Assembly (NCBI GenBank): GCA_002269645.1
Contig: NIVC01003129.1
Span: forward strand, 1-64,000
DNA length: 64,000 nt
From: Macrostomum lignano
Lineage: Eukaryota
Direction of reading: 5' to 3'
A program made the position numbers and the translations under genes. Shown here one piece after another: positions 28,001 through 64,000 of this stretch (its first letter is position 1; every line of letters starts with the position of its first letter). Under the pieces are notes generated by a model. The model was not told the DNA's origin and did no database searches. It was given only the letters and a program-made list of their open reading frames with translations.

Positions 28001-28267
28001 CTGCGGCTGCCGAATTCCTCGCTGGCAGTCGGCGGCGTCTGCGCTGGCAGCGGCTGGGCGCTGGTGGCGACGAAGGCCGAGGCGGCAGACGATGATGGCG
28101 GTCGGTACGGCGAGCTGCTGACGCTGCTGCTGGAGGAGGCCGGTGGCGGCGACGGGGAGCTGCGGCCGCTGCTGGCCAACTGCCGGGTGCGCAGCCTCGC
28201 CGCTGATGCCGCCGGGGCTCGGGCGGCGATTCTGTGCCGCCGCTGCAGGGACGCCGGAGGCGACTGA
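22009..28267 (+). CDS. NEK8: NIMA-related kinase with RCC1 repeats; exons 22009-22107, 23547-23955, 24254-24488, 25297-25510, 26797-27136, 27504-28267
   Basis: VVIK, HRDLKPDNILL, KLADFG, LVGTPAYLSPE, SDIWALGC.LYEM and LFPLLTDLGCV, then RCC1 repeats (VLTFGCGRDGALG|HGD, VACGRRF...VFAWG). Phases are consistent if intron 2 is GC-AG. Confidence 0.88.
22288..23400. repeat. 24-bp then ~31-bp minisatellites in NEK8 intron 1
   Basis: CAGGTGTGACAGTCCTTACAATCT, switching near 23196 to CAGGTGTGACAATTTTACCTTCCGATGGTCT. Confidence 0.95.
24030..24235. repeat. 22-bp minisatellite in NEK8 intron 2
   Basis: CCCTCCTGAGAATCGCCCCCAA. Confidence 0.95.
24590..25257. repeat. 26-bp minisatellite in NEK8 intron 3
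   Basis: CTAGTCAGAACTGGCACAGTGTCACA. Confidence 0.95.
25800..26578. repeat. CA-rich ~13-bp compound repeat in NEK8 intron 4
   Basis: CAACACAATACCA variants. Confidence 0.95.
27145..27421. repeat. 23-bp minisatellite in NEK8 intron 5
   Basis: CTCTGGGCTGACCCAGTGCGGGA. Confidence 0.95.
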
Positions 28268-33342: not shown

Positions 33343-33959
33343 CTTGGGACTGATCAGTGATGGGGCAGCCGGTGGGTTCGAATCGGTCTTGCGGTGAGTC
33401 TGCGCTGCTCACCTGCTCGGCTTGGCCTTAAATTCTTCATCTCAAAGAAAGGGATTAAACCGCGCTTCGCCGCAGTCTAAGTGGCTCAGACTGAGGAACC
33501 GAAATTCCCGAAGGAGCTGCCGCTGTCCGGGGGTGTCCGCGCTGCCCGGCCATCCTTGCCTCGGGTTTCCATGAAATGTTTTTGACGAGATTTTTTTTCA
33601 ACTTGTAAATAACATTTTCTAAAAACATCAATTTGAAGGATTTTAGCGGCTTCTAACGGGGAGGCCGGCTGATGGATCCTGTTTCACTGCCGCGCCGAAA
33701 TCTTAAGCCCCATGCTTTGTTCGAGCAGTTTCAGAGTGTTGCCAGGCCGTTTGGGTAATTTCTTTGCCCAGGTGGCGAAGTAAAAACATTTGCTGCTCAA
33801 GAAAGACGGACAGACAGTAACTTCGTTTTCTGGGAGCTAATTCTTTCTCGCGCAGAGATCCGAACCCATCATGTTTTGGTAGCGCCAGGGAATCGAACTC
33901 ACGTTACCGCTGCATCCTAATTAATAATAATTAATACTATATATATAGCATATAGTAGA

Positions 33960-34990
33960 GGCTAGCAGGGAAAGCCGTGGAATTTCCATGGAGCCTACTG
34001 AGAGTGCATAGATTGTGTTTACAGGTGGTGGGACTGCCGTAGGTGAATCCGCCGGAATTCCATATGGGTCGCAATGAACTTGACTTACTTGACTCTACGC
34101 GAGCAGGTGGTTGTGCACTCAAAGGCATGGGTCGCTGCTTAACTCTCTGAGTAAAGGGTAATCTCCACAGAATGTTCTGGGGGTAATTTCCTTCACCCAG
34201 GCGCACTGATTGTACAGCTCCATGGCGCAGAAGCTGATGGCCGTGCGGCCGGAGGTTCCGCTTTCTAAATGCTTCTGGATGGGGACACCGCGTCGAGCAG
34301 ACGGCGGGTAGTCTTCGTTGCCTCTCCTCTGACAAAGAGGTCAAGGGGGGGGGAATGTTTAGGAAGGAGTTCATGCCAGCAAAGGGCGTAGAGGGAGTCG
34401 CGCTCATGATAGCTTGAAAAGCGCGGCCTTGCACCCTGTTAAGAGCTTCAAGGACCCCTTTCACCTCTAGGGCATTGTTCCAAATGAAGCCGGCGAAGGA
34501 GATGGCCGGTCTCACGATGGCAGTGTAAATCCACCAGAGGCGGGGGTGGAGGCCCCACGTAGTGCCGAAAGTTCTGCGGATCTGCGAGAGCTTTGCAGGC
34601 TTTGGTTTGAACCTGTGGTCGAGGGTGACGCCCAGAAATCTGGTTTGTCTCTCCATGGCAACGGGTTTGCCATAGAGGGAGAGCGGTTCAATCCTCCAGT
34701 TACGGCGGCTGGTGAACATGATGGCCATGGTTTTAGACTCAGAGAACCTGAGACCGCAGCTATGTGCCCAGCGCTCGGCACGGTGGATGAAGGCTTGAAG
34801 GAGGTCTCTTAGGACCGCGGGTGTTGGTCCGGCCACAGTGGCGGTAACATCGTCGGCATAGCCGATTTTCTGAACCAGATCCGAGTAACGTCTGCACTCG
34901 TCCATGACCAAGTTCCAGAGAATCGGGCTGAGGACTTCACCTTTCTGGACCTCCACAGAGCGGGAGTGCCAGCAGGCAGTTGACGAAACT
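33960..34990 (-). mobile_element. Degenerate, internally deleted non-LTR retrotransposon (same family as 45656-49131)
   Basis: QKGEVLSPILWNLVMDE..KIGYADDVTA..LRDLLQAFIHRAERWA...TWGLHPRLWWIYTAIVRP aligns with the intact copy. Confidence 0.9.
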
Positions 34991-35842
34991 CCGATTGCAC
35001 ACCTGTTAGCAGCAGCAGCAACTCCTGCACTGGCGCTGACAGGCGCGGATGATGCAGCCTGCCAGCTGGAGTCGCCTACGACGCAGCGAGTCGCTTGTCT
35101 CATGGCCCGGGCCCCCGCTCGTAAGTCATTGTGTTATTCTGCTCTCTCTGGGGCCCAGGGCCCATTGGAGCCCTGCGCGCCGCGTCAACCTGCTCAGTGT
35201 AAGACATCCCATGAAACAGCATCTTAGGATGTCTTACACTGAGTAGTATTGAGTCGTCCCTGGGTCGCCGCAATCCCGGTTGCACTGCGACTCCGGAGCC
35301 TCACTGTACGTCCTTAGAGGTTGCCACAATGGCGGCCGATGCCAGCCTGCAGTCCCGTATAGGGAAAGCTGGCATTTGAGCACACGGCCAAGCACAGCTG
35401 CCAGATCATGCTGCTAGACACGTAGATCCATCCTGTCCCATCTTTGCTGTAGTCGCCAAGATGACGAGTGATCTTTAAAATTTCTACGTCTGGTTAGTCC
35501 GAGAAGCGAGCGTGAAGTCCAGTTTTTAGTTCGGTTAGAGTAGCACTTGGGTTCACATGGATCGCCTCCTCCAGAAAATCCAGCATCTCTTGATCCACGC
35601 TCACGTGCTTACGACCTGACCTCCCTTTGGCATCCTTGCAGACCTTCCCTCTTCACACTCGTGTATTCATTCGGTAGTTCGTTTGATTCCCATAGCACGA
35701 GCGAGGTTTACGTACAAAGCCGTTTTCATGTGTATATCAGATGTAAGTTCTGTGGTGTGTACGAGCATATACGAGTATGAGCCTTTTTCGATCATTATCG
35801 CTCATTCGTGCAGTCGGCATTCTCAAAGAAATAGCAGCTTGT

Positions 35843-36797: not shown

Positions 36798-39700
36798 TCA
36801 GGTATAGAAAATTGGGCCGCAGCCTCCTAGCTTCACCATCGCTGAGTCTGCAGGACAGCTGAAGGCTGACTGGAACTCAGGGATCAGCGACAGCACTCCG
36901 TTGACGCTGCAATTGAGCAGTGTTCATTAAACAATGCGAAGGTTAAAATTTGAAAAAATCAGCTTGAGTCATCGGCTTACTGAATATCCTCTGGCATGAG
37001 GCGGCCCAAGGCTCCCCGGATGTATGAGTACAGCGGATCCCGGGTGAAGCAGAATGTCTGCAATTTCAGTTCAGGCTTATGATACAGGTTCAAGTCCACA
37101 GTAAAGTTGTAACCCTCTCTTTACCTGTGCCCTTTCTTCACCTGTTCCCTCTCTTCACCTGTGCCCTCTCTTCACCTGTGCCCTCTCTTCACCTGTGCCC
37201 TCTCTTCACCTGTGCCCTCTCCACACCCGCCATTTCGGTACCCGTTTTTGACCCTCGGCCTCACCTGTGCCCAGGCAGTGAACAAAGACTGCATTTTGTT
37301 GAGATGGCCAAGCGGCAGCGGGAGCTCCGACCCACCCCCCTCGAAACCGGCGTAAGCCTTCGACACCAGCCGGAGCGCATCCGTCTCAGCAACTGCCGTG
37401 CGCAGAGTTCTCGAGATTATCGGGCTGATGTCCACCTGAGTGCGGGATGGTAATTATCACTTAATCAGTATGGGATTTCACACCGCTTGCCCCAGCTTGA
37501 TCACTCAGCCAGCAGCCCTGCCCCACAGAATCCCTCAGCATGTGCCCTCAGCCACCAGCCCTGCCCCACAGAATCACTCAGCCAGCAGCCCTGCCCCACA
37601 GAATCCCTCAGCCACCAGCCCTGCCCCACAGAATCCCTCAGCCAGCAGCCCTGCCCCACAGAATCCCTCAGCCACCAGCCCTGCCCCACAGAATCCCTCA
37701 GCCACCAGCCCTGCCCCACAGAATCCCTCAGCCACCAGCCCTGCCCCACAGAATCCCTCAGCCAGCAGCCCTGCCCCACAGAATCCCTCAGCCAGCAGCC
37801 CTGCCCCACAGAATCCCTCAGCCAGCAGCCCTGCCCCACAGAATCACCCTCAGCCACCAGCCCTGCCCCACAGAATCTCTCAGCCACCAGCCCTGCCCCA
37901 CAAAATCACTCAGCCAGCAGCCCTGCCCCACAGAATCACCCTCAGCCACCAGCCCTGCCCCACAGAATCCCTCAGCCACCAGCCCTGCCCCACAGAATCC
38001 CTCAGCCAGCAGCCCTGCCCCACAGAATCCCTCAGCCAGCAGCCCTGCCCCACAGAATCCCTCAGCCAGCAGCCCTGCCCCACAGAATCACCCTCAGCCA
38101 GCAGCCCTGCCCCACAAAATCCCTCAGCCACCAGCCCTGCCCCACAGAATCCCTCAGCCAGCAGCCCTGCCCCACAGAATCCCTCAGCCAGCAGCCCTGC
38201 CCCACAGAATCCCTCAGCCAGCAGCCCTGCCCCACAGAATCACCCTCAGCCACCAGCCCTGCCCCACAAAATCCCTCAGCCACCAGCCCTGCCCCACAGA
38301 ATCCCTCAGCCACCAGCCCTGCCCCACAAAATCCCTCAGCCACCAGCCCTGCCCCACAAAATCCTTCAGCCACCAGCCCTGCCCCACAAAATCCCTCAGC
38401 CAGCAGCCCTGCCCCACAGAATCCCTCAGCCAGCAGCCCTGCCCCACAAAATCACTCACATAGTAACTTCTGTTTCCAACCCAATACGGCCCTGCCGTCA
38501 AGTCCCAGTAGGTGAAGTTGACGCACTGCGCCTTCGCCAAATAGCTCTGCCTTGTCCGCTCCGACCACATGGGATTTGAGTTGCCCTGCTGGTCCGTGAG
38601 CTGGCCTTGAAAGAAGAGGTTGGGATTCGAATTTGTCAGAAAATCCCCTGTTCAATCGGCCGGTACCTAACTGGACTAAAATATAATCTCACAAGCACAA
38701 GGTGAATTTTAGGCCAATAGAATGCTCAATAGGAGTCCAATTAGAATCCCACTGGAGTCCAATTAGAATCCCACTGGAGTCCAATTAGAATCCCACTGGA
38801 GTCCAATTAGAATCCCACTGGAGCCCAATTAGAATCCCACTGGAGCCCAATTAGAATCCCACTGGAGTCCCATTAGAATCCCACTGGAGTCCAATTAGAA
38901 TCCCACTGGAGTCCAATTAGAATCCCACTGGAGTCCAATTAGAATCCCACTGGAGTCCAATTAGAATCCCACTGGAGCCCAATTAGAATCCCACTGGAGC
39001 CCAATTAGAATCCCACTGGAGTCCCATTAGAATCCCACTGGAGTCCAATTAGAATCCCACTGGAGTCCCATCGGAATCCCACTGGAGTCCCATCGGAATC
39101 CCACTGGAGTCCCATCGGAATCCCACTGGAGTCCCATCGGAATCCCACTGGAGTCCCATCGGAATCCCACTGGAGTCCCATCGGAATCCCACTGGAGTCC
39201 CATCGGAATCCCACTGGAGTCCCATCCGAATCCCATGTCCAGCAGCCGCAGCAGCTGCAGCAGCTCTGCAGTCACCAGTGGCATCCACAGCCTTGATCAG
39301 CTCAGCCGCCATGCGCTGCCCGATGGTGGCGAAATTGATGTAGCCCGGCAGCTGAGGGGAGAAGAACGGCCACTGCAGAATGCCGGCAGGAACTGTCAGC
39401 TGCGCTGTGGAAGTCATGGACAGCGCCACGTCGAAGGTGGCGCCGCTCCAAGCGGTGGCCTGTGGCACGGTGCCCAGCAGGGAGCCCTGCTTCAGGCGCT
39501 TGAAGTTCTGCCAGCTGATTGAGATGTCCATCATGGGGTAATCCGGGTCAACAGTGAGCTGTCGCGGCCGGGGTGCGTGAAAGTGCGAGAGTTTAGAGCT
39601 GACACACTCTAATCTAGAGTGACACATTTTAATCTGGAGTGACACATTCTAATCTAGAGTGACACATTCTAATCTGGAGAGACACATTCTAATCTAGAGT

Positions 39701-40397: not shown

Positions 40398-43300
40398 GGA
40401 GAGGGAGAGAGACGGAGAGGGAGAGAGATGAAGAGAAAAGGAGAGAGGCGGAGAGACGGAGAGGGAGAGAGAGGGAGAGAGGCGGAGAGGGAGAGAGATG
40501 AAGAGAAAAGGAGAGGGAGAGAGAGGGAGAGAGATGGAGAGAGATGGAGAGGGAGAGAGAGGGAGAGAGATGGAGAGGGAAAGAGAGGGAGAGAGGCGGA
40601 GAGGGAGAGAGAGGGAGAGAGAGGGAGAGAGAGGGAGAGAGATGGAGAGGGAGAGAGGCGGAGAGACGAAGAGGCAGAGAGAGGGAGAGAGGGGAGCAGG
40701 GCAGAGGTCAACTGCCAAATCGGAGGTGCTCCTTAGGCCCGAGCTCAACCGGGTACAAGTGCAGCCGGTGCAGGATTCATATCCGATATTTATCGCAATA
40801 AGAAATTTACTCTTACGCATGAAACATTTGACAAAACCGAAGTTTGCTAAATTATAACCAGTTTCGTACTAATTGGAGCTCATTACTTCCCATCAGAGGG
40901 AAAGGGGAGATATACCGGTCGAAGAATTATAATCAGAGATCAGAGAGAGCCTGGGGCGAGCTGTACAGAACAAACACAAGTCCCGACCCACAGCCTGCTT
41001 GCTGGAGTCCACCAGGTGGTCCGCAACGAAGAGACTGTTGAGCCCCAGCAACATGAAGGTCTTGGTGCGGTCCAAGCAGTAGTCCAGCCTGCTCTGGTAG
41101 ATGTAGCTGCTGCTGGACAGGCTGGACTCAAACTCGCGCTTGGCGTGAACGTAGGCGCTCGACAGGTCACCGCTGTAATTGCGGATCACCTGCCAATTCA
41201 GGTAGTTGGACAGCCTCCTGTGCGGGGGAGCATGGGTGTGGCATTAGCTGACGGTGACAGGTAAATCCTGTGTCTGTAGCGGGTAAATACTGTGTCTGTA
41301 GCGGGTAAATCCTGCGTCTGTAGCGGGTAAATACTGTGTCTGTAGCGGGTAAATCCTGTGTCTGTAGCGGGTAAATCCTGTGTCTGTAGCGGGTAAATCC
41401 TGTGTCTGTAGCGGGTAAATCCTGTGTCTGTAGCGGGTAAATCCTGTGTCTGTAGCGGGTAAATCCTGTGTCTGTAGCGGGTAAATCCTGTGTCTGTAGC
41501 GGGTAAATCCTGTGTCTGTAGCGGGTAAATCCTGTGTCTGTAGCGGGTAAATCCTGTGTCTGTAGCGGGTAAATAAGTTTATAGCTCATAAAACGTGACT
41601 CCTGCCTCTAACAAGAGGGACTCCCTGTCTGGCAATGAGAACTCGGTCTCAACGGGAATCCACCTGCCTGTTATAATCGACTGGGTGCAGCAACCTGATG
41701 GTCTCCCCAACGTAGGTCATCGCCCGCGTCAGGTAGTCAGCCGTCTGCACTGCCACCCTGGTGGAGCCCTGCACCCCGGACTCGAGGGTGCCGCTGAACA
41801 GCGCAGACCACCTGATTGGCTGGTAGCTCGAGTCCATCTCAGTCAGGCTGATTTGGTTGCCAGGGGCCAGCGGCGGCTTGTCGGGGTCCGGTCCAACGGC
41901 GTTCCTGCTGAACTGTTGGTATTGACAGTGGGACGGTGCTTTGGTAATTGGGAGAATTCTCCCCAACCATATTTCCCTGCTAGGTGAATTCTTCCACAGA
42001 GCTCACATTGGCGAGGGCCGTCTCGATCTCCATGACGTCGAGCACGAAGTTCTCGATGCGCGCCGTGACGCCGTTCGGATTATCGACCGTGCCGGGCTCG
42101 GCGTCGGCAACCAGGAGTTTCGCTGTTGCTCTCATGTACTCCTTGTAGGACTCGCGCTGCCTGTGATACTGGAAATAAAGTACTCTCTGACCCCGTGTAC
42201 TCTCTGACCCTGTGTACTCTCTGACCCTGTGTACTCTCTGACCCTGTGTACTCTCTGACCCTGTGTACTCTCTGACCCTGTGTACTCTCTGACCCTGTGT
42301 ACTCTCTGACCCTGTGTACTCTCTGACCCTGTGTACTCTCTGACCCTGTGTACTCTCTGACCCTGTGTACTCTCTGACCCTGTGTACTCTCTGACCCTGT
42401 GTACTCTCTGACCCCGTGTACTCTCTTACATCCCAAGTGATCTCTGCCCCACATGTACAGCCATTTCCCTGTGTCCTTTCTTCAGTCGCGCACCAGTGCA
42501 CAGACAGCTGCATCCAGTACTCACAAAGTCGAACAGGTACATGGCAGGTAGCATGCCGATCCCGCCGTTGTAAATCTGGAAATAAGGGCGAAATAAGCTG
42601 ACTTGCCGCACTCAGAGCAGAGCACCTGAGCTTCAGGACCTGAGCTTCAGGACAGGCAACACCCTCACCGAAATCGTGTACCGGCCTCCGTCAAGCGGGT
42701 TCGGCTCCACCCGGTACTCGAAGAAGGCCGAAGCTCCGTAGGTTTTCACGGCGGAGAGCAGCTCGCGGTCCAGGTCGAACTGGCCGACCACCGAGCCGTT
42801 GATCACGTAGAACTGACGCCGCAGCAGGTCGGCGAACAGGGCGCCGCGCACCCGTTCGATTCGAAAGTCGTCAATGCAGGTGCCGAAAATTGTTTTCAAC
42901 TTTCGTTCGTATGAGTCCGCCGAGTTGCGAACGATCGGCGAACGGAGGGCGGCCTCGAGCTTGTCGGCGTTCTGCCTGATCAGCTCGCCGCTGACCGTCC
43001 GCTCGCGGTAAGCCGGGTTTATCGGCATCACCTGCTCGGCAGCGCCGCAGGCGAAAGCGTAGAAATTATCGCATGGGCTGGCCGAGCGGTTGAGGAAACT
43101 CACCTGGGGAGAAATGGTGGCTTGAAGTTTAGAAGTACAGGGAAACTGCGAGCTGTGATTCCAACCGAGGGAATCGGTGGGGAATCGGTGGAGAATCGGT
43201 GGGGAATCGGTGGGGAATCGGTGGGGAATCGGTGGGTAATCGGTGGGGAATCGGTGGGGAATCGGTGGGTAATCGGTGGGGAATCGGTGGGTAATCGGTG

Positions 43301-43814
43301 GGGAATCGGTGGGGAATCGGTGGGTAATCGGTGGGTAATCGGTGGGTAATCGGTGGGTAATCGGTGGGGAATCGGTGGGTAATCGGTGGGTAATCGGTGG
43401 GGAATCGGTGGGGAATCGGTGGGGAATCGGTGGGTAATCGGTGGGTAATCGGTGGGGAATTGGTGGGGAATCGGTGGGGAATCGGTGGGGAATCGATGGG
43501 GAATCGGTGGGGAATCGGTGGGGAATCTGACTGCAGTGGTCCCTCACCAGGTAGCCGGAGCGGTACAGGCAGGCCTCACTCTGGCACGCAGTCTCGACCC
43601 CACCACCGCCGCCAGCACCGCCGCCGTGGGTGGCAGCCAGGGCGATGACCACAACCAGCAGCAAAACGACAATGCCAGCCAGGATGTTCTCAGCGATGGA
43701 GTGCCTGGCCGGGTTGAGCTGCTGCCGGACCCGCTCCCAGATCCTGGCGGTGACTGAGCTGGTCTCGGGCTCCGCGTACATCTCCATGTTGATGGACTCT
43801 GGATCGGCAGCCAT
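36798..43814 (-). CDS. Neprilysin/ECE (M13) homolog, predicted inactive; 12 exons: 43814-43548, 43103-42669, 42575-42525, 42168-42007, 41912-41695, 41217-40992, 40213-40037, 39558-39276, 38605-38460, 37435-37265, 37057-36981, 36906-36798 (~773 aa)
   Basis: Type II TM, C..EAC, SASPCDNFYAFACG, LSNYLNWQV, KIGY, PAGILQWPFF, INFATIG, HVNGVLSLIPEFQSAFSCP. Phases are consistent throughout. Confidence 0.9.
37120..37215. repeat. 17-bp repeat containing a copy of the adjacent donor site
   Basis: TTCACCTGTGCCCTCTC; its minus strand GGGCACAGGTGA equals the exon 10 junction. Confidence 0.9.
37490..38460. repeat. 30-bp minisatellite in neprilysin intron 9
   Basis: CCCTCAGCCAGCAGCCCTGCCCCACAGAAT. Confidence 0.95.
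38735..39235. repeat. 22-bp minisatellite in neprilysin intron 8
   Basis: GGAGTCCAATTAGAATCCCACT. Confidence 0.95.
39595..39990. repeat. 20-bp minisatellite in neprilysin intron 7
   Basis: GAGTGACACATTCTAATCTA. Confidence 0.95.
40305..40700. repeat. GA-rich tract in neprilysin intron 6
   Basis: Direct inspection. Confidence 0.95.
41260..41575. repeat. 22-bp minisatellite in neprilysin intron 5
   Basis: GGGTAAATCCTGTGTCTGTAGC. Confidence 0.95.
42180..42425. repeat. 17-bp minisatellite in neprilysin intron 3
   Basis: GTACTCTCTGACCCTGT. Confidence 0.95.
43165..43527. repeat. 11-bp minisatellite in neprilysin intron 1
   Basis: GAATCGGTGGG / TAATCGGTGGG. Confidence 0.95.
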
Positions 43815-44501
43815 TGGAGCAACTGTTTGGGGGCCAAGAGAGACAGGAGTTTGAGTTGAGCTCGGCGACAGTGCCTGCTGGATCAAAGTGTGCTTTAGAA
43901 CAGAGCAGAGCTGAGCACTTTTATTCTCCGCGCTCCTTTGAGTCGCTATCGCTCAGAGCTCAGATAAGGCGCCAGTGGCAGCAGCTCAATTGTTTCGATT
44001 GAGAGCAGGCGGCACACCAGCTGAGCACCTTCATGTCAGGCTTTTTTCATTTTCTAAGCAGAGTTTCCCTTGAGCAGTAAAGTTTTTGATAATGAAAAAA
44101 TGTTATGGGTCGAGCAGCAGCTTATCTTTTTCTTAACGAAACTGGGCAGAAAGGCGAGAGTCAAAGTGAAAGCTCAGGCTAATTCTTTCTGATTTCAGAT
44201 ATTTTATTTTTCTATACGTTTCAGCTCGCATATTGATTTGAATAGTCTGTATTCTTTGTGTAAATTATTTCAAAGATTACATCTGGCTAGCAATCCATGT
44301 AAAATACGGATCCAGATGCCAGTCTTAGTGCACCCCGGCTTCGACACTGGAATGCAATGCTTATCGAACGGGACTCTATGGTCGCAACCAAACGATTGCA
44401 TTTACAATGGAGCTGATGGATCCGCTGTTCCAAGTTGGCAATCATCAAAAACTTAATTCAGAGCGGTCGAAAAAGAATCAAAAAATAATATTATCGGAGA
44501 C

Positions 44502-47500
44502 ATGCACGGGTTCGGATATTTACTTGTCATGCTGGGGTCTCTGTCCATTGTGCTGCAGCTTCTGGCCGCATTTGGCTCCGCCGTCGATTTAGCGACGACT
44601 AAGAATCAGCAGAGCGGCGCCAGCGAAAATAGCCAAGAGGAGCTTGAGACTCAGGCCAATGCGGCCCAGCTGCAGGCGATGGAAGCCAACCCGGATCCCT
44701 ACAAGCACCATGCTGTGCACTTGTGCAACACTAACTTGGACTGTCTGGCTATGCACGGCGGCTGCAGCCACGACCAGTACATTGGGGACAGCGAGGCCAA
44801 GTGAGTGCTGGGCTGGATATTTTTATTGCTTGTGTTTGAGACCCCCCGCACACACGAACACAGCGGGGGAGGAGGGTGGAGGTTAGCCAGACCCCAGGCA
44901 CACGAGAACACACCGGGGAAAGTAGGGGTGGGGGTTAATAAGGCCCCAGGCACACAAGAACACAGCGGGGGAGGAGGGTGGAGGTTAGCCAGACCCCAGG
45001 CACACGAGAACACAGCGGGGAAAGGAGGGGTGGGGGTTAATAAGGCCCCAGGCACACGAGAACACAGCGGGGAAATAGGGGTGGAGGTTAATAAGGCCCC
45101 AGGCACACAAGAACACAGCGGGAGAGGAGGGGTGGAGGTTAGCCAGACCCCAGGCACACGAGAACACAGCGGGGAAAGGAGGGGTGGGGGTAAATAAGGC
45201 CCCAGGCACACACGAACACAGCGGGGGAGGAGGGTGGAGTTTAGCCAGACCCCAGGCACACGAGAACACAGCGGGGAAAGGAGGGGTGGAGGTTAATAAG
45301 GCCCCAGGCACACAAGAACACAGCGGGAGAGGAGGGGTGGAGGTTAATAAGGCCCCAGGCACACAAGAACACAGCGGGAGAGGAGGGGTGGAGGTTAATA
45401 AGGCCCCAGGCACACAAGAACACAGCGGGAGAGGAGGGGTGGAGGTTAATAAGGCCCCAGGCACACAAGAACACAGCGGGAGAGGAGGGGTGGGGGTTAA
45501 TAAGGCCACAGGCACACAAGAACACAGCGGGAGAGGAGGGGTGGGGGTTAATAAGGCCACAGGCACACAAGAACACAGCGGGAGAGGAGGGGTGGGGGTT
45601 AATAAGGCCCCAGGCACACAAGAACACAGCGGGAGAGGAGGGGTGGGGGTTAATACGGCGCGACGGCGAGATGATCCCAGTAGAGCTTGTCACACTGGTC
45701 GAGCTCTGCTCCACCAGAAACTATGAGCTGCTCGTGGCAGGTGACATCAATGCCCACCACACCCACTGGGGCAGTTCTGATATAAACCAGAGAGGTGAAG
45801 ACTTCCTGGCTTATATTGCTACTACAACCCTTGAGTTCTGTAACTCGGGTAGTACCCCTACCTTCAATAACGGACGCCGATCGGAGGTGCTGGATGCCAC
45901 CCTCGCCACGCCCAGGCTCTTCCAGAGCACTAGGGAATGGCGGGTGCTTCCTGAGGCGTCCCTCTCCGATCACAAGTTCATCTCTTTCACGCTGGCCAGC
46001 GCCCGTAACGCAGGCCAGCTTTACTGGAAACGGAATGCTAGGAATACCGACTGGACCGCCTTCAGGCTTGCCCTGGAGGAGACCTATCGTTGCACTAGCG
46101 CTCCAGTCTCCATCAACACCTGCGAAGAAGCAGATGAATTTGCGGCCGCACTTACGGACTCGCTCACTGCTGCCTTCGAAGCCTCATGCCCACTAAAGGC
46201 ATATAAAGGCAAACAGTCGGCCCCATGGTGGAACCCGCAGCTTGGCGACCTCCGTCGCAGAGCCAAAAGGCTTCACCGCAGGGCCCAAAAAACTAAAAAC
46301 CCGGCCGACCAAACCGCCTACCTGAACTCTATCCACGAGTTCAAGAGGCAGGTTAGGAACGCCAAAACCAACAAGTGGCGCGAATACTGTGAGGAACTTG
46401 AGGGCTCCCGCCCCACCTCCAGAATCGTTAAAGCCCTCACCCTGGACAAAATGTCCAAACTCTCCTCAGTCAAGAGAGCCGACGGCTCGCTCACTGAGAA
46501 CCCAGGAGAAACACTGGAAGCGATGCTAACAGCGTTTTTCCCGAACGAGCCAGCTAGGCCCGGCCCCCCTGACCACTCAGTGGGCGGACACGTACTGGCT
46601 GACTCAATCATCACGGAGGACCGCGTTACTAAAGCTGTCTCCTCCTTCAAACCCTTCAAATCCCCAGGACCGGACGGCGTTGTGCCAGCCTTCCTGCGGG
46701 AGGCGGTGAAATGCACCGGTTTCCTGCGGAACCTTTGCCGGCTTCTGAAAGCCTGCATTGTGCTCGGCTTTGTTCCGAAATCCTGGACCGAGGCCAAGGT
46801 GGTCTTTATCCCCAAGCCTGGCCGACCGGACTACCGGTCCATTAAATCCTTCAGACCAATTAGCCTCACCTCCTCATTGGTGAAGCTGTTAGAGAGACTG
46901 GTGCTCTGGCGCCTCCTCTCTGTGGAACTGAAGAACAAGCCGCTCAGTGAGAACCAGCATGCCTTTCGGGCAGGCAGGTCCACGGAGAGCGCGCTTCACG
47001 TTCTGGTTGACATGCTGGAGAAAGCCGTTCTTGGTAATGGCTACGCTCTCGCTGTCTTCCTCGACATTGTTGGAGCCTTCGATAATGTCCTCTTTGAGGC
47101 CTTTGACAGAGCTCTACGTGCTAGAGGAACCCACTCGCACCTCACCCGGTGGATCATGTATATGATCAGCCACCGTACTGCCACCGCACACCTGTTGGGC
47201 CACCAACGGACGGTAACCGTCTGCAAAGGCAGCCCCCAGGGCGGTGTCCTCTCTCCAGTTCTCTGGAACATGGTCATCGATGAGCTCCTCCAGGACAGCC
47301 ATCTTGACCCCATCCTCAAGGTCGGTTACGCCGATGATGTCACAGCCGTGGCATCCGGACCGTCACCTGAAACCCTTAGAGATCTTTTGCAAAACTTCAT
47401 TCGCTCTGCTGAACGTTGGGCGGACAGGTGCGGCCTCAGGCTCTCCGAGACCAAAACTGTCGCGATCATGTTCACCAGCAGGGTAAACTGGCGTATCCGC

Positions 47501-49610
47501 CCACTAAAGCTTTACGGGGTGGAAATTCCATCCTGCAAGCAAACCAAGTGTCTCGGCGTTACGCTGGACCACCGGCTGAGCTGGTCCACCCACGTCCAGG
47601 CCAAAACCAAAAAAGCCCTCGCGATTCTTGCGCAGCTGCGCAGAGCCGTCGGCACCACCTGGGGCCTCACCCCAAAGCGTCTCTGGTGGATCTATACCGC
47701 AATGGTCCGACCGGCCGTTACATACGCCGGCCTGGTCTGGACCAGCGCCTTGCAGATTAAAACCTGCCACGAAGCCCTCAAAAAGGTGCAGGGACGTGCG
47801 TGCCGCATGATCCTGAATGCCCCGCTCTCTGCTCCCTTTGACGGCCTCAACGCCTTTCTCTGCCTCCCGCCTCTGGACATCTTTGTCCGTCGCGAGGCTG
47901 CTAAAACCACCCGCCGGCTCATCGAGGCTGGTGTTAGCTTCAAGCCACAAAGAGCGATGGCGAAGCGCAAGCTCCTGCCGCACTCTGACCTGTGCCTTAA
48001 AGTTCTGGAGGAGAGTGGGAGTGCGGCTGTCCTTTCGGACGCTGAACCGCGCTCCCTCAACCTCTACCAACGCTTCAAGGTCACGATCCCCTCCAGGGAG
48101 AACGCCAACGACAGCTGGGCCCCTCAGGAGGTTCACTGCTTCACTGACGGATCCTCCAAAGACGGTTTATCCGGCTTTGGAGTCTGCATCCTTATCAACG
48201 GCCGCGTGATTGCTACTCACGCCCAACACACTGGCAGACTCTCCAGCGTCTTCCAGAATGAAGTCCTTGCCATCAGCTCCTGTGCAGCTGAGCTCCACCG
48301 CAAGGACTTCAAGGACAGAAGAATCTTCTTCCACTCTGACAGCCAGGCCGCTTTACAGGCCCTGTGTCACACCACTACGAACTCCCGAACAGTCCGCGAC
48401 TGTATCGGGCAGCTCAACAAGCTGGCTCGGAGGAACACCGTCCGGCTCACGTGGATCCCAGGACACGCCGGCTTCAAAGGTAACGAGCTCGCCGACTCCC
48501 TCGCTAAGGCGGGCTGTTCCGGCTCGCCCCTTGGCCCCGTGCCCCTGGCCCCCATCCCCGCCACAGTCATTAATCGTCAGATTAACGACTGGGCGGACAT
48601 CCTGCACTTGCGCAGATGGGATGGTATCTCCAACTGCCGCCAATCTCGTGCGGCAGTGCCCAATCCGTCCCTCAAGCTGCGGAGAATCCTTTTGAATCAA
48701 AATCGAAAAGATATCCGCGCTCTCACTATGACCTTCACAGGTCACGGTTGCTTTGCCAGGCACTGCTTCCTCCGATGTGTTCGCCGGAGTGAACTCTGCC
48801 CCTTCTGCAGCCTCGAGAATGAAGATGCCATGCACTTCGTCTGCTACTGCCCGGCCTTCAACCGAGACCGGCTCAACCACCTCGGGCCCAACCCGTCCCT
48901 GGACGACGTTTGCCGGCCCGAGAACATCCCACGGCTCATCCGGTTCCTCCGGGCCACCAAGCGAGCCTCCGTCTTCCCCACCGAAGACAACGCTGCAGAC
49001 AGGACCGGCAGACCTCCCTGACCGGCCCCGCGCCCTAGCCTATGCGGGTCTTTCAGGGATTAGCGGAATGGGCGACGCTCGCCTCCCCGCTGCGTCTTCG
49101 GACCGCCCTGCAGCTAAGTCAAGTAAGTCAAGGGGGTTAATAAGGCCCCAGGCACACAAGAACACAGCGGGAGAGGAGGGGTGGGGGTTAATAAGGCCCC
49201 AGGCACACAAGAACACAGTGGCAGTGGGAAACAAGAAACCGCGCTATTAATGCAAAGCTTCCAAAGAACCCCGCTCTTACCACCCTGGCAGGCAGGATAC
49301 GGAGCTGCTGCCCAAGTGCTACCAGCCGCACGGTCTATCAACCCGAGGAGTTTGCCTGTGCACCGAGTGCTCCAACGACCTGCACTGCCACCGCCAGTCC
49401 CGCTGTCCGCACTCGCTGACAGGCCAGTGCGTCAGCGAGCATTCAGTGAAGACCTGCCGCTGCGGGCAATTCCGCCATGACTACAGCAAGATGGGAGATA
49501 GCGGCAGCAGAGAGCGATCCAGTGTTGACTGGAACTCCCTGTTGGACTATTTGATCTGTCGCAACATTTTGCTGCGCAGGTTGCTGTCTGATTCCGTGCA
49601 GTGTAGCTGA
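44502..49610 (+). CDS. Secreted Cys-rich protein (205 aa); exons 44502-44800, 49292-49610
   Basis: Signal peptide MHGFGYLLVMLGSLSIVLQLLAAFGSA, acidic pro-like region, and two modules C-x5-C-x5/6-C...C...CxC. The phase-2 GT-AG intron is consistent. Confidence 0.8.
44845..49220. repeat. ~51-bp minisatellite (44845-45655 and 49132-49220), split by the LINE
   Basis: GGGGTGGAGGTTAATAAGGCCCCAGGCACACAAGAACACAGCGGGAGAGGA. Confidence 0.93.
45656..49131 (+). mobile_element. Young 5'-truncated non-LTR retrotransposon (partial APE + RT + RNase H, intact 1116-aa ORF 45671-49021)
   Basis: APE motifs VAGDINAHH..WGS and SDH; RT motifs PQGGVLSP..WN and GYADD; RNase H motifs FTDGS, EVLAI, SDSQAAL, WIPGHAG..GNELAD; C-terminal Cys/His. 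Tail AGTCAAGTAAGTCAA and TSD GGGGGTTAATA (45645-45655, 49132-49142). Architecture resembles the LOA/R1/I groups; clade not assigned. Confidence 0.97.
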
Positions 49611-50984: not shown

Positions 50985-52340
50985 CCTTGAGATTGCCTTG
51001 AGATTGCCTTTATATTGCCTTTATATTGCCTTGAGATTGCCTTTATATTGCCTTTATATTGCCTTGAGATTGCCTTGAGATTGCCTTTAAATTGCTTTGA
51101 GATTGCCTTGAGATTGCCTTGAGATTGTCTTAAGATTGCCAGGGCGTCTTGAGGTTGTGTGTCTGGACTTCTTGAGGTTGTGTGTCTGGACTTCTTGAGG
51201 TTGTGTGTCTGGACTTCTTGAGGTTGTGTGTCTGGACTTCTTGAGGTTGTGTGTCTGGACTTCTTGAGGTTGTGTGCCTGGACTTCTTGAGGTTGTGTGC
51301 CTGGACTTCTTGAGGTTGTGTGCCTGGACTTCTTGAGGTTGTGTGCCTGGATGTCTTGAGGTTGTGTGCCTGGGCGTCTTGAGGTTGTGTGCCAGGATGT
51401 CTTGAGGTTGTGTGTCTGGACTTCTTGAGGTTGTGTGCCTGGACGTCTTGAGGTTGTGTGTCTGGACTTCTTGAGGTTGTGTGTCTGGACTTCTTGAGGT
51501 TGTGTGCCTGGACTTCTTGAGGTTGTGTGCCAGGATGTCTTGAGGTTGTGTGTCTGGACTTCTTGAGGTTGTGTGTCTGGACTTCTTGAGGTTGTGTGCC
51601 TGGACTTCTTGAGGTTGTGTGCCTGGACTTCTTGAGGTTGTGTGCCAGGATGTCTTGAGGTTGTGTGCCTGGGCGTCTTGAGGTTGTGTGCCAGGATGTC
51701 TTGAGGTTGTGTGTCTGGACTTCTTGAGGTTGTGTGTCTGGACGTCTTGAGGTTGTGTGTCTGGGCGTCTTGAGGTTGTGTGCCAGGATGTCTTGAGGTT
51801 GTGTGTCTGGACTTCTTGAGGTTGTGTGCCTGGACTTCTTGAGGTTGTGTGCCTGGACTTCTTGAGGTTGTGTGCCAGGATGTCTTGAGGTTGTGTGCCT
51901 GGGCGTCTTGAGGTTGTGTGCCAGGATGTCTTGAGGTTGTGTGTCTGGACTTCTTGAGGTTGTGTGTCTGGACGTCTTGAGGTTGTGTGTCTGGGCGTCT
52001 TGAGGTTGTGTGCCAGGATGTCTTGAGGTTGTGTGTCTGGACTTCTTGAGGTTGTGTGCCTGGACGTCTTGAGGTTGTGTGCCAGGATGTCTTGAGGTTG
52101 TGTGTCTGGACTTCTTGAGGTTGTGTGCCTGGACTTCTTGAGGTTGTGTGCCAGGACGTCTTGAGGTTGTGTGCCAGGATGTCTTGAGGTTGTGTGCCAG
52201 GATGTCTTGAGGTTGTGTGCCAGGATGTCTTGAGGTTGTGTGCCAGGATGTCTTGTGGTTGTGTGCCTGGGTGTCTTGTGGTTGTGTGCCTGGGCGTCTT
52301 ATGCCTTTCATCCGTCCGTGTGTCTTGAGGTTGTGTGTCT
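50985..52340. repeat. 11-bp repeat followed by 23-bp minisatellite
   Basis: GAGATTGCCTT (to ~51140), then TTGAGGTTGTGTGTCTGGACTTC. Confidence 0.95.
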
Positions 52341-61025: not shown

Positions 61026-61744
61026 GTTTCTCTTTTTCTTTCACTGTTTCTAAATTTTAATTGCATTGGGAAAATGATTCGCAAGAATTTTCAACGAAAT
61101 AGAAAGCAAACAGGACAATTCGGAGTCGACCCGAACAAAATCGAAGAGTGTCAGCGAATGATTAGAAATTCTATCCCATCTTCTGTCAGGAGCATCATAT
61201 AGTGCTCACCAGAGAATTAGACCGTGAGCAGCTGCAGAATTAAATACTCACATCAGCGCTCCTACGGGACGGTTGACTTTCTAACTGGGCTGAATTTGCC
61301 CGCGGATCGAAGCGTAAAAGAGGGGTAAGAGGAGAAAAACCCCGAGAACTGAGCCTATGTTGGAGGCATTATTTATTAAGAAGCATTGCTCTTCAGTGCC
61401 AGCTGGGCTGAGAGCAGAGTGAACGTCTTGTAAAACAGAGAGATAAAGCCGCTGGGCCGCGCCACACACTGCTCGGTGCGTTGGAGTGCGGGTGTCCCTT
61501 GAGGGACTCTGGCATCTACCATGTTTGAAATTATGTGCGCTAGCTCGATGATGCGACTAAGAGGGCTTTTTCTTTTAAATATTAGTCATTTCCTTCTGAC
61601 TGGCCAATGCTTGCAGGGAAAGCAAGCATTCAATTCCTATTCGATGCGTCTTTAATACATAGATGCACAGTAATGGCATTGGGTCTTGAAGTGTCTTCAA
61701 TCCAGTATTTGATAGCATCGCAAAAATTCTTTTTAGTCTAAATC

Positions 61745-64000
61745 ATGAATTTCTTATCCCCGAAAACCTCGTTATTCATACGTACCTTGTTATTAACAAT
61801 GGTTCTTTCGCTTGGCTCCTCTGCAGTTCCGGCCGTCTACCAAATGCACCACTTCTACGACAGTTCGAGCCCCCGAGGCACCGAGCTTGTGTTGGAACGG
61901 CTGGTCAAAATTATCACTGCATCGCGTCGCAGCTGGAAGCTGACTCTGGCCACGCACTTTCTACCGCCAGGCTCCAGTCAGAAGCTCTCAGAGCTGCTAT
62001 GCAACGCCTCCATGGCGGGCGGCACGGTCGCTCTGACATCCAGCGTGATGCCCGAATATGACACGATTATTGACAACTTTGCCCGCGTACATCGAATGCT
62101 GTACTTTACGTGGAACTACGAGAGACCGTCGCCGGTCGATGCCGGAGTCAACTTTCACTTTAACTTCCTACCGGACTTGTTTCCCGCTTTCACGCGCACA
62201 GTCGCTTTTCTTAACTGGACGAGATTCTCCTACCTGTATGCTACTCATGCAGGATTTCAGAGAGGCATTCGACTGGCTAGCGAGCTCCACCGGGTTCTGG
62301 GAGTTGCTGACGTTCAAGTAGACCTTCGACACGTTTCCCCATCGACTGAGCCTTCTAACCACAACACTCTGCGCTATCTCGATCTTCAACTGGTCCAGTT
62401 TCCGAGACGGCACATTGTTATTGATGTTGGCAGTGCGGTTAGCGCCAAGCTTATCTTGGAAGACTTGCTGGAGTTCGGCATGAACAGGGCTGAGTATCAC
62501 TACGTCCTCTATTCGTTTGGCATGCGGGAAATGACGCTATCTCGATTCATTCACAGCGGAAGCAATATCACCGGCTTTGAGTTTCTGAATTATGGCTCTC
62601 ACGATGCGAACTCTTTCGCAACGAAGCACATATTCACAATAGATCACGGCGCTCCAGAGAAGAACCCGCCTAACTATGAGATATTTGCTATGCATAATGC
62701 TGTGAAACTGATCGCTAGCGCGCTGGATAACCTTTGGCGTCTAGTGATACCAAACTCTCTTCGACTGCCCTGTCTCTATCGCGATAGTAAAAAAAATTCA
62801 CACCCACTTCCTCTGGGTACATTTCGAGCTGGTCAGCGCTTGCAGAATTTTGTCAGTGATCGAGGCCCTCACTTTGTCGAATATGGGCACGTCGCTTTCG
62901 ACAAAACAGGCATGCGAACCAACATGAGCATTCGCATCATGGATCTCATGGGACCAGTGGGCTCGCAGCCGATAGGCTACTGGTATAAGGGCCGCTTCAA
63001 CATCACCGCCAGCAAGTACGTCGGTAGGTTTGGACAGCACAAGACTAACAAGTTCCCAAACGACACTGTCGTGAAGGTGGTTACCATAATTGGGGAGCCA
63101 TTCGTCATGCACAAGATCCCGGGAAGCAATGCCACAAGTGGAAAGGCAAACTTTCAAGGCTTCTGCATCGACTTGGCGCACATGGTATTCGATAAACTGG
63201 GTGTTGACTGGGAGCTGCATCTAGTCAAGGATAAGAAGTTTGGAGCGAAAATTATTGACAACGAGACAAAACAGCCCGAGTGGAACGGAATGATGGGTAA
63301 GTGGTCGACGTTCTTTCCAGACTTTCCAAATTAACTTGCACCATACCAACTTTGTAAATCATGGTAAATTTTAAAGTAAAGATTTTTACGAAATAAACAT
63401 TAAACATCTATCGAAAAAGGTAACGTACTGTCTCCTATTCACATCAAACTAAGTAGTTGTAGTATTTTTCTTTCCCAATTGTCTGCTGCTTGTATACCAT
63501 TAACGCATTTACGCAACAAATATTTTTAGGCGAAGTAGTGCGAGGTGAGGCCGACGTCGCCATCGCATCGTTGACAATCACATCTGACCGCAGCGAGTTC
63601 GTGCTGTTCTCCGAACCGTTCATGAACTTCGGCCTCTCTGTCATCATTAAGAAGCCCCAGAAGACCAAGCCGGGAATGTTCAGCTTCACTCAACCGCTGG
63701 AGGACAATCTCTGGATTGCCATTCTGGCTGCCACCATTCTGCTGGCCGCCGTCATGACCTGCCTGGCCCGGATGAGCCCACTGGAGTGGCGCTACGACGA
63801 CACGCTTGTAAACGGGGACGAGCAGCAGCGAATGCGCCGCGTGCGCCACAACTTCAGCCTGATGAACAGCATGTGGTTCAGCTTTGCTGCCTTCGTTCGA
63901 CAGGGCGTCGACATCTCGCCGAGGTCGGCATCAACGCGAATGATGGGTTCGTTCTGGTGGGCGTTCTCCCTTATCATCATGGCGTACTACACCGCCAACT
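61745..64000 (+). CDS. Ionotropic glutamate receptor, AMPA/kainate type (3' partial); exons 61745-63296, 63530->64000
   Basis: Signal peptide, ATD, S1 (VVTIIGEPFV..FQGFCIDLA..WNGMMG|EVVRGEADVAIASLTIT..R..FSEPFM), M1, pore FAAFVRQGVDISPRS, M3 ..YYTAN. Confidence 0.96.

What the first reader, a model, noticed from the sequence alone, without database searches (positions are those of the whole stretch)
63886..63920. AMPA-type receptor with Arg hard-wired at the Q/R site
Seen: AAFV-R-QGVDISPRS (CGA at 63898-63900) aligns with GluA2 GAFM-(Q/R)-QGCDISPRS. Established: in mammals this Arg is made by ADAR2 editing and abolishes Ca2+ permeability; most invertebrate AMPA-like subunits encode Gln. The codon is CGA, not the CGG produced by editing CAG, so a retrocopied edit is unlikely. 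Inference: an independently evolved Ca2+-impermeable or modulatory subunit.
Basis: partly seen in the sequence, partly recalled or inferred. Interest (0 to 1): 0.7.

Follow-up and report, generated by a model that had tools for sequence, protein, structure and literature searches.

The report
Flatworm AMPA receptor with built-in pore arginine
The window ends in a flatworm (almost certainly Macrostomum lignano) AMPA-type glutamate receptor gene whose DNA directly encodes the pore arginine that mammals make in GluA2 only by RNA editing. It is a real and probably functional case, but one of several lineages that have hard-wired this residue.

Summary
Window 63886-63927 (+) reads AAFVRQGVDISPRS, CGA at 63898-63900 is Arg, and it aligns without gaps to the GluA2 Q/R site (E 2.5e-45).

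The gene model is ATG 61745, exon 1 to 63296, a 233-nt intron, and exon 2 from 63530, cut by the window end inside M3. A database protein that matches 100% supplies the missing C-terminus, giving 936 aa. The nearest relatives are Macrostomum lignano proteins.

All 60 PDB matches listed (the display limit) are GluA1-4 (6e-144). An NJ tree puts the gene in a flatworm-specific AMPA clade (bootstrap 96-100). Its two closest M. lignano paralogs carry Gln-Gln, and three others carry Asn. The sister group carries Arg (one unidentified flatworm-like protein) or His (cestodes).

Among 59 AMPA-clade representatives, 41 are QQ and 4 are RQ: this gene, that flatworm-like protein, locusts and hagfish. The Arg is therefore independent of vertebrate editing but not unique.

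CGA is one transition from CAA and is one of this gene's two commonest Arg codons.

The most likely function is a GluA2(R)-like subunit that makes heteromers Ca2+-impermeable and non-rectifying. This is inferred, not tested.

Verdict: a new member of a known kind, of moderate interest.

The parts
61745..63296 (+). Exon 1 of the iGluR gene: start codon, signal peptide (about aa 1-27), whole amino-terminal domain and first part of ligand-binding lobe S1. It covers 517 codons plus 1 base and ends at the donor G|GTAAGT.
   Evidence: There is an in-frame stop at 61739-61741 directly before the ATG. The reading frame is open from 61742 to 63331. It aligns at 55% identity over aa 5-883 with the full-length M. 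lignano paralog P0205.
62000..62947 (+). Amino-terminal domain (aa 86-401).
   Evidence: Pfam ANF_receptor PF01094, E 1.5e-18.
63297..63529 (+). The only intron in the visible part of the gene: 233 nt, GT...TTTTTAG, phase 1, inside the Gly518 codon (NGMMG|EVVRG).
   Evidence: Reading through hits a stop at 63332. The spliced product matches the paralogs' WNGMMGEVIRG(K/E)ADVAIA with no indel. The intron lies 14 nt upstream of the conserved spiralian phase-0 intron.
63530..64000 (+). Exon 2 (partial): rest of S1, M1, M2 pore loop and start of M3. It is cut by the window end after ...AYYTAN.
   Evidence: Database protein P0004 is 100% identical over window aa 549-674 and continues the protein for another 262 aa.
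63068..63660 (+). Ligand-binding lobe S1 (aa 442-561, interrupted by the intron).
   Evidence: Pfam Lig_chan-Glu_bd PF10613, E 5e-33, and SBP_bac_3.
63589..63591 (+). CGC = Arg538, equivalent to GluA2 Arg485, which binds the agonist alpha-carboxylate.
   Evidence: Alignment to GluA1/GluA2. Invariant in the subclade alignment.
63709..63774 (+). M1 transmembrane helix (LWIAILAATILLAAVMTCLARM, aa 578-599).
   Evidence: Gap-free alignment to GluA2 M1. Pfam Lig_chan starts at aa 577.
63865..63927 (+). M2 re-entrant pore loop (NSMWFSFAAFVRQGVDISPRS, aa 630-650).
63898..63900 (+). CGA = Arg641 at the Q/R site (Q1). This is the feature in question.
63901..63903 (+). CAG = Gln642 at Q2, the position that carries the genomic Arg in acoel AMPARs.
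   Evidence: PMC13520880.
63910..63912 (+). GAC = Asp645, the conserved '+4' acidic residue of the selectivity filter and polyamine site.
   Evidence: PMC6307864.
63940..63999 (+). Start of M3, ending in the gate motif. It reads YYTAN(LTAC) here instead of SYTAN(LAAF).

Best explanation
The last 2.3 kb of the window hold the 5' two-thirds of an intact AMPA-type ionotropic glutamate receptor subunit gene of the flatworm Macrostomum lignano. The tip of its M2 pore loop carries a genomically encoded arginine (CGA) at the Q/R site, which is the position ADAR2 editing converts from Gln to Arg in mammalian GluA2. The gene belongs to a flatworm-specific AMPA-receptor radiation in which duplicated subunits differ at this one pore position: Gln, Arg and Asn in M. 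lignano, and Arg or His in parasitic relatives. The most likely mechanism is inferred by homology, not measured. The subunit co-assembles with Gln-bearing paralogs. Its positive side chain in the narrowest part of the channel repels Ca2+ and intracellular polyamines. Heteromers that contain it should therefore have low Ca2+ permeability, a linear current-voltage relation and low unitary conductance, and receptors made of this subunit alone should conduct poorly or not at all. The animal would thus obtain by gene duplication plus a fixed substitution the subunit-dependent choice that mammals obtain by RNA editing.
For: Shown by the sequence: the Arg codon and its gap-free alignment to GluA2(R). 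The ORF is intact, with a signal peptide, ANF_receptor, Lig_chan-Glu_bd and Lig_chan domains, and a correctly spliced junction. Retained in the window part are the agonist-binding Arg485 and Thr480 equivalents, the Q2 Gln and the +4 Asp. Retained in the database continuation are Ser654/Thr655, Glu705 and the Cys718-Cys773 pair. AMPA identity: all 60 PDB matches listed are GluA1-4 at E 6e-144 to 1e-132. NJ bootstraps are 100 for the AMPA clade against GRIK1/kainate-like sequences, 96-100 for the flatworm clade, 89-98 for the subclade and 100 for the M. lignano trio. Organism: the nearest hits are UniRef M. lignano proteins A0A1I8HA92 and A0A1I8IS65. Paralogs with QQ (P0001, P0205) and NQ (P0002, P0013, P0084) exist as candidate partners. 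From the literature: Arg at Q1 gives loss of Ca2+ permeation, loss of polyamine block and small currents. An engineered Q1R in either subunit of a protostome (Lingula) AMPAR heteromer abolished rectification and the Ca2+ effect. A natural genomic Arg one residue away does the same in acoels (PMC13520880). All-Arg homomers conduct cations poorly (PMC12226733).
Against: There are no functional or expression data for this protein. In Hofstenia, Q1R on an R2Q background did not restore a linear I-V, so the effect of Arg at Q1 depends on context. The subunit is divergent: the M3 gate reads YYTANLTAC instead of SYTANLAAF, and two agonist-contact positions are changed (Tyr450 to Phe, Pro478 to Ser). 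Gating or ligand could therefore differ. The Arg rests on one assembly. The matching database protein may come from the same assembly, so it is not independent confirmation. The window ends 100 nt after the site, so everything from mid-M3 onward is taken from a database protein, not from the window.
Confidence: 0.65

Rival explanations
1. The Arg is real, but the subunit does something other than GluA2(R)-like tuning. It might form homomers with altered (for example partly anionic or very low) conductance, act as a non-conducting or trafficking-limiting subunit, or respond to a ligand other than glutamate. Ca2+ impermeability of heteromers would then not be its role.
For: The M3 gate motif is divergent (YYTANLTAC) and the LBD carries Y450F and P478S substitutions. 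The effect of Q1R depends on context in Hofstenia. All-Arg channels conduct poorly.
Against: The core agonist-binding residues and the +4 Asp are conserved. The same M3 variant is present in the QQ paralogs, so it is not linked to the Arg. Q1R behaved as expected in rat, Saccoglossus and Lingula receptors.
Confidence: 0.17
2. The Arg is a fossil of RNA editing. An ancestral flatworm AMPAR transcript edited at the Q/R site was reverse-transcribed and inserted, founding this intron-poor subclade with G already fixed in the codon.
For: Subclade-A genes are intronless in two cestodes: Spirometra 2886 nt and Anoplocephala 2781 nt. The window gene lacks all of the roughly 11 introns that mollusc and annelid AMPAR genes have in the matching region. 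Its single intron is at a non-conserved position. The subclade carries Arg in two deep branches and His (CAC/CAT, one transition from CGC/CGT) in cestodes. Planarian ADAR2 edits mRNA (PMC9479739). CGA is what an edited CAA would give.
Against: There is no evidence that any flatworm edits this site. Two of the three M. lignano members are QQ, so Arg-ancestral and Gln-ancestral scenarios need the same number of changes. A subclade-C cestode gene is also intron-poor, with 3 introns, so intron loss may be general in flatworm AMPAR genes. A plain A-to-G mutation explains the codon equally well.
Confidence: 0.06
3. Artefact or dead gene: the G is a sequencing or assembly error or a rare allele of a CAA codon, or the locus is a decaying duplicate in the repeat-rich, partly polyploid M. 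lignano genome.
For: Only one assembly was seen. The surrounding window is packed with minisatellites and a LINE. The 90% cluster of the matching protein has a single member.
Against: The window holds 674 codons without a stop or frameshift. The splice junction is exact. Every column that is invariant across the subclade is kept. The window protein differs from the paralogs at 34-45% of residues, so it is an old, maintained gene and not a recent decaying copy. Arg recurs at this site in other lineages.
Confidence: 0.07

Closest known systems
Mammalian GluA2 (GRIA2), Q/R-edited subunit
   Same: AMPA-type subunit. Arg at exactly the same M2 position (Q1), followed by Gln and the +4 Asp. The flanking motif WFS..AF.(R)QG.DISPRS is nearly identical. 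The expected effect is low Ca2+ permeability, no polyamine block and small conductance.
   Different: Here the Arg is in the DNA (CGA), not produced by ADAR2 from CAG. The conserved intron just after the site, which holds the editing-complementary sequence in GRIA2, is absent: the exon reads on through DISPRS into M3. The gene is not orthologous and sits in a flatworm-specific radiation.
Hagfish and some fish GluA2-type genes with chromosomal Arg at Q1 (Kung et al. 2001, as cited in PMC13520880; hagfish cluster P0020/P0156/P0157)
   Same: Genomically encoded Arg at Q1 in an AMPA-clade subunit.
   Different: Those are vertebrate GluA genes and group with lamprey GluA at bootstrap 100. This is a separate, protostome origin.
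Acoel AMPAR subunit Hofstenia-98014323 and orthologues (Wang et al. 2026, PMC13520880)
   Same: A lineage-specific AMPAR duplicate with a chromosomally encoded pore Arg. In acoels it was shown experimentally to give linear, Ca2+-insensitive heteromers, and it has Gln-Gln paralogs as alternatives.
   Different: The acoel Arg is at Q2 (Q-R). Here it is at Q1 (R-Q), as in edited GluA2. The animal lineages differ (Xenacoelomorpha against Platyhelminthes). The flatworm protein has not been tested.
Locust 'glutamate receptor 1-like' (Schistocerca spp., e.g. XP_049813861.1) and barnacle Glutamate receptor 1 (Lys at Q1)
   Same: Protostome AMPA-clade subunits whose genome-derived models carry a positive residue at Q1. 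RQ is present in all six Schistocerca cluster members.
   Different: These belong to the arthropod Glu-RI clade and are sister to Drosophila Glu-RI, which is QQ. They are known only as database predictions, and I found no functional description.
M. lignano paralogs A0A1I8HA92 (P0001) and A0A1I8IS65 (P0205)
   Same: 66% and 55% identical to the window protein, with the same domain order, the same unusual YYTANLTAC gate motif and the same species.
   Different: They carry Gln-Gln at the pore (ASFVQQG). They are the obvious candidate partners or ancestral state.

Membership tests
AMPA-type ionotropic glutamate receptor subunit | Domain order: signal peptide, amino-terminal domain, bipartite ligand-binding domain, M1-M2 loop-M3-M4 channel. 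| tested here: met
   Pfam ANF_receptor, Lig_chan-Glu_bd/SBP_bac_3 and Lig_chan on the window-encoded 674 aa. S2, M4 and the C-tail are seen only in the 100%-matching database protein P0004.
AMPA-type ionotropic glutamate receptor subunit | Phylogenetic placement inside the bilaterian AMPA clade rather than the kainate, delta or NMDA clades. | tested here: met
   All 60 PDB matches listed are GluA1-4. On the NJ tree of 413 LBD+TMD columns, the AMPA clade (lamprey/hagfish GluA, Drosophila Glu-RI, Trichinella, molluscs, annelid, flatworms) is separated from human GRIK1 and kainate-like sequences with bootstrap 100. Only distance trees were possible, and delta, phi and NMDA sequences were not in the set.
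AMPA-type ionotropic glutamate receptor subunit | Amino-acid agonist-binding residues (GluA2 Arg485, Thr480, Ser654/Thr655, Glu705; Tyr450, Pro478). | tested here: met
   Arg485, Thr480, Ser654/Thr655 and Glu705 equivalents are conserved. Tyr450 is Phe and Pro478 is Ser. The S2 residues lie outside the window.
AMPA-type ionotropic glutamate receptor subunit | SYTANLAAF gating motif in M3. | tested here: inconclusive
   The motif reads YYTANLTAC, with 6 of 9 positions kept, including the best-conserved Y, A and N. The same variant is in both QQ paralogs. Only YYTAN lies inside the window.
AMPA-type ionotropic glutamate receptor subunit | Fast cation current gated by glutamate and AMPA. | not testable with these tools
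   This needs heterologous expression.
Q/R-edited subunits (GluA2, GluK1, GluK2) | Genomic Gln codon (CAG) converted to Arg by ADAR2 on an exon-intron hairpin. | tested here: not met
   The genomic codon is already CGA. There is no significant hairpin around the site (inverted repeats of 25 nt or less at 72-91% complementarity; fold z -1.27). No intron follows the site within the window.
Subunits with chromosomally encoded pore Arg at Q1 (hagfish/fish GluA2 type) | Arg codon in genomic DNA at the Q1 column. | tested here: met
Subunits with chromosomally encoded pore Arg at Q1 (hagfish/fish GluA2 type) | Orthology to vertebrate GluA2. | tested here: not met
   The gene falls in the flatworm-specific clade, bootstrap 96-100, far from the hagfish/lamprey pair.
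Acoel Q2-Arg AMPAR subunits (Hofstenia-98014323 type) | Gln at Q1 and Arg at Q2. | tested here: not met
   The order is Arg-Gln, not Gln-Arg, and both flanks align without gaps.

The most novel reading that the evidence does not exclude
The intron-less or intron-poor flatworm subclade that contains this gene was founded by retroposition of an AMPAR mRNA that had been A-to-I edited at the Q/R site. On this reading the hard-wired Arg (and the cestode His derived from it) is a genomic fossil showing that Q/R-site editing existed outside vertebrates. A milder version is more likely, at roughly 0.35. In that version flatworms have an old, dedicated Arg/His-type modulatory AMPAR subunit lineage, and M. 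lignano carries a fully hard-wired Gln/Arg/Asn pore toolkit.
Probability: 0.06. Interest if true: 0.8.

Novelty: new member of a known kind. Interest (0 to 1): 0.4.

Why it matters
AMPA receptors that do or do not pass Ca2+ are central to synaptic plasticity and excitotoxicity. Vertebrates make that choice through one edited codon. A 2026 study (PMC13520880) showed that acoels reach the same end with a genomic Arg one residue away, and called convergent evolution of this property an open possibility. It cited only early vertebrates and fishes for a genomic Arg at Q1.

This gene gives a protostome example at exactly the GluA2 position. Gln and Asn paralogs are present in the same animal, and Arg or His relatives are present in parasitic flatworms. 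The idea of recurrent, hard-wired tuning of AMPAR pores can therefore be tested directly in a tractable flatworm model.

The gene also corrects a truncated database model. The window supplies the missing 548 N-terminal residues.

Tried and rejected
- **Word-indexed protein search.** Exon 2 as query found nothing. A profile of the subclade returned only one M. lignano paralog. Dense flatworm sampling was therefore not possible, and ancestral states stay unresolved.
- **Look-ups of encoding DNA.** P0205, P0004 and P0003 were not on record. As a result the paralogs' Gln codons, the downstream part of this gene and the organism of UPI0006108251 could not be obtained.
- **Kainate-type identity.** Rejected by the tree and by the PDB ranking.
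- **Arg at Q2, as in acoels.** Rejected by the gap-free alignment.
- **Codon argument (CGA against CGG) against a retrocopied edit.** Rejected. CGA is one transition from CAA and is one of the gene's two commonest Arg codons. Both Gln codons are used, CAA 5 and CAG 12.
- **Intron as proof against retroposition.** Weakened. The intron is at a non-conserved position 14 nt from the conserved spiralian one, and cestode relatives are intronless.
- **Intron poverty as proof of retroposition.** Also weakened. A subclade-C cestode gene has only 3 introns.
- **Editing hairpin around the site.** None found.
- **Second iGluR copy in the window.** None found.
- **Rfam families and tRNAs.** None found.
- **Supplements of PMC13520880.** Not held.
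- **Literature searches.** No description of pore residues in flatworm AMPARs turned up.
- **Structure prediction.** Not run. The gap-free alignment to solved GluA2(R) structures already fixes the residue's position.

Full report
**1. The observation**

Window 63886-63927 (+) translates to AAFVRQGVDISPRS. CGA at 63898-63900 is Arg, followed by CAG (Gln) and, four residues on, GAC (Asp). The stated end coordinate, 63920, stops 7 nt before the end of the quoted peptide. Everything else is exact.

phmmer of the 156-residue exon translation against all PDB chains gives GluA2 as the best match (E 2.5e-45). The alignment has no gap from M1 through M3 and places this Arg on the Arg of GluA2(R) structures...slgafmRqgcdisprs.... 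The Arg is therefore at the Q/R site proper ('Q1'), not at the adjacent Q2.

**2. The gene**

A 530-codon open frame (61742-63331) lies just upstream.

- Its first ATG (61745) follows an in-frame stop and opens a signal-peptide-like segment.
- The frame leaves at G|GTAAGT (63296/63297) and re-enters after ...TTTTTAG at 63530.
- The spliced junction reads WNGMMG-EVVRGEADVAIA, matching the paralogs residue for residue.
- Reading through the intron instead hits a stop at 63332.

The window therefore encodes 674 residues of an iGluR: signal peptide, ANF_receptor domain, Lig_chan-Glu_bd and the start of Lig_chan. The window end cuts the gene inside the M3 gate motif. No second iGluR copy is present in the window.

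**3. Relatives and organism**

An exhaustive phmmer search of 1.84 billion cluster representatives found 4225 homologues.

- P0004 (388 aa) is 100% identical to window residues 549-674. It supplies the missing M3-S2-M4-C-tail, giving a 936-aa composite. Its name is masked because the window encodes it.
- The next hits are UniRef proteins of Macrostomum lignano: A0A1I8HA92 (P0001) at 66% identity and A0A1I8IHC4 (P0002).
- A profile search added A0A1I8IS65 (P0205), 55% identical over nearly the full length.
- I therefore take the window to be M. lignano. This is very likely but not proven by a named record.

P0004 starts at an internal Met, so the database model is truncated. The window supplies its missing 548 N-terminal residues.

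**4. Family**

With the 936-aa composite, all 60 PDB matches listed (the display limit) are GluA1-4 (E 6e-144 to 1e-132).

- Conserved: equivalents of the agonist-binding Arg485, Thr480, Ser654/Thr655 and Glu705, the Cys718-Cys773 pair, the Q2 Gln and the +4 Asp.
- Changed: Tyr450 is Phe and Pro478 is Ser.

NJ trees were built on about 400 LBD+TMD columns:

| Grouping | Bootstrap |
|---|---|
| AMPA clade against human GRIK1 and kainate-like sequences | 100 |
| All flatworm AMPA-like sequences as one clade | 96-100 |
| Subclade A | 89-98 |
| M. lignano trio (window gene, P0001, P0205) | 100 |
| Order within the trio | unresolved (47) |

Subclade A consists of the M. lignano trio and a sister group. 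The sister group holds UPI0006108251 (P0003, organism unknown) and the cestodes Anoplocephala, Spirometra and a Logan transcript.

Only distance trees were possible. Delta and NMDA sequences were too distant to appear among the hits.

**5. The Q1 column across relatives**

- Of 134 aligned hits, 103 have Gln and 8 have Arg.
- In the AMPA clade of 59 representatives: QQ 41, RQ 4, KQ 1 (barnacle), NQ 3 (all M. lignano), HQ 1, and nine with L, F, G or M.
- The four RQ sequences are the window gene, P0003, Schistocerca 'glutamate receptor 1-like' and hagfish GluA.
- Every member of the locust cluster (six sequences) and of the hagfish cluster (three sequences, two species) keeps RQ.
- Arg also occurs in kainate-type genes of a tick, a barnacle and a killifish.
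- In subclade A, the window gene is RQ, both M. lignano paralogs are QQ, P0003 is RQ, and the cestodes are HQ or HE with codons CAC/CAT.

Counting changes on the tree, an Arg-ancestral and a Gln-ancestral subclade cost about the same. The Arg is clearly independent of vertebrates, locusts and acoels. Whether it arose once or twice within flatworms cannot be told.

**6. The codon argument**

This does not follow.

- Editing of CAA gives CIA, which is read as CGA.
- This gene uses both Gln codons (CAA 5, CAG 12).
- CGA is, with CGC, its commonest Arg codon (13 of 41). Synonymous drift would erase any signal in any case.

**7. Gene structure**

- Mollusc (Patella, 66.7 kb) and annelid (Lamellibrachia, 52.9 kb) AMPAR genes have at least 14 exons, with about 11 introns in the part matching window residues 1-674.
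- Those introns include a shared phase-0 intron at GELxx(G/H)|(E/K)AD and one at D(I/V)SPR|S just after the Q/R site.
- The window gene has neither. Its single intron is phase 1 and lies 14 nt upstream of the first of these.
- Its exon reads straight through DISPRS into M3.
- The subclade-A genes of Spirometra and Anoplocephala are completely intronless.
- A subclade-C gene of Hymenolepis has three short introns, one at VQQ|GVD.

Flatworm AMPAR genes are thus intron-poor, and a retrogene origin of subclade A is possible. That keeps the 'fossil of editing' idea alive, but nothing positive supports it. I rate it at about 6%.

No editing-type hairpin surrounds the site in the available sequence.

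**8. Mechanism**

The following is established in the literature:

- Arg at Q1 lowers cation conductance, abolishes Ca2+ permeation and removes polyamine block.
- A natural chromosomal Arg at Q2 does the same in acoel heteromers.
- Chromosomal Arg at Q1 was previously reported only for early-branching vertebrates and fishes (PMC13520880).
- Channels with four Arg conduct cations poorly (PMC12226733).

By homology, the M. lignano subunit most likely acts as a GluA2(R)-like partner of the QQ paralogs. It would give Ca2+-impermeable, non-rectifying heteromers.

This step is inferred. Three points weaken it:

- Q1R did not linearise one Hofstenia background.
- The M3 gate is unusual.
- Two ligand-contact residues are changed.

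**9. Novelty**

The protein, in truncated form, is already in UniRef. Hard-wired pore Arg is a known phenomenon. I found no paper discussing pore residues of flatworm AMPARs.

The finding is a new, protostome member of a known kind. It is useful mainly as a further independent case for the 'recurrent evolution' picture, and because one animal carries Gln, Arg and Asn versions side by side.

Noticed in passing
window 63979-63999 (continues beyond the window in P0004): The M3 gate motif reads YYTANLTAC instead of the near-universal SYTANLAAF. Only the three M. lignano subclade-A paralogs share it. The changes fall at and next to the bundle-crossing and Lurcher region, so gating may differ.
   Followed up: partly
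M. lignano proteins P0002, P0013, P0084 (not in the window): Three further M. lignano AMPA-clade subunits carry Asn at the Q/R site (VVNQG / IVNQS), which is the NMDA-receptor residue. This species therefore has Gln, Arg and Asn pore variants hard-wired.
   Followed up: partly
window 61745-63296 against database protein P0004: The public protein model for this gene starts at an internal Met (residue 549). The window shows a 1552-nt first exon with signal peptide, ATD and S1 that the model lacks. An acceptor-like TTCTTTTTAG sits 8 nt before the ATG and is a possible trans-splice site.
   Followed up: partly
L002 1001-3886 (Spirometra), L006 501-3281 (Anoplocephala), L005 196-6433 (Hymenolepis): Cestode orthologues of the subclade are intronless genes with His at the Q/R site. 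A Hymenolepis AMPAR gene of another subclade has a 62-nt intron exactly at VQQ|GVD.
   Followed up: partly
window 45245-49018 (+); also 33940-35133 (-): A 1258-codon open frame of a non-LTR (LINE) retrotransposon with endonuclease, reverse transcriptase and RNase H domains. Its 5' end runs into a 51-bp minisatellite (44848-45659). A second reverse-transcriptase fragment lies on the other strand.
   Followed up: partly
window 23361-28264 (+): A multi-exon gene for a protein kinase domain followed by RCC1 repeats (NEK8/9-like architecture). Minisatellites interrupt it in the apparent introns.
   Followed up: partly
window 19196-20332 (+) and 42636-43952 (-): Open frames matching Nop14 (ribosome biogenesis) and the N-terminal domain of an M13 (neprilysin-like) peptidase.
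   Followed up: no
window 11569-57506, about 30 arrays: Minisatellites are unusually dense: periods of 11-57 bp, up to 50 copies, many at 90-100% identity. Examples are 22286-23206, 37545-38458 and 51137-52300. They generate long spurious ORFs on both strands.
   Followed up: no
window 16328-16777: An interstitial array of TAACCC/TAACCA hexamers (about 75 copies at 79% match). This is a degenerate reverse-complement TTAGGG telomere-type repeat inside the window.
   Followed up: no
window 6001-10000: An AT-rich block (GC 0.30-0.33) in a window that otherwise runs at 0.45-0.62 GC.
   Followed up: no
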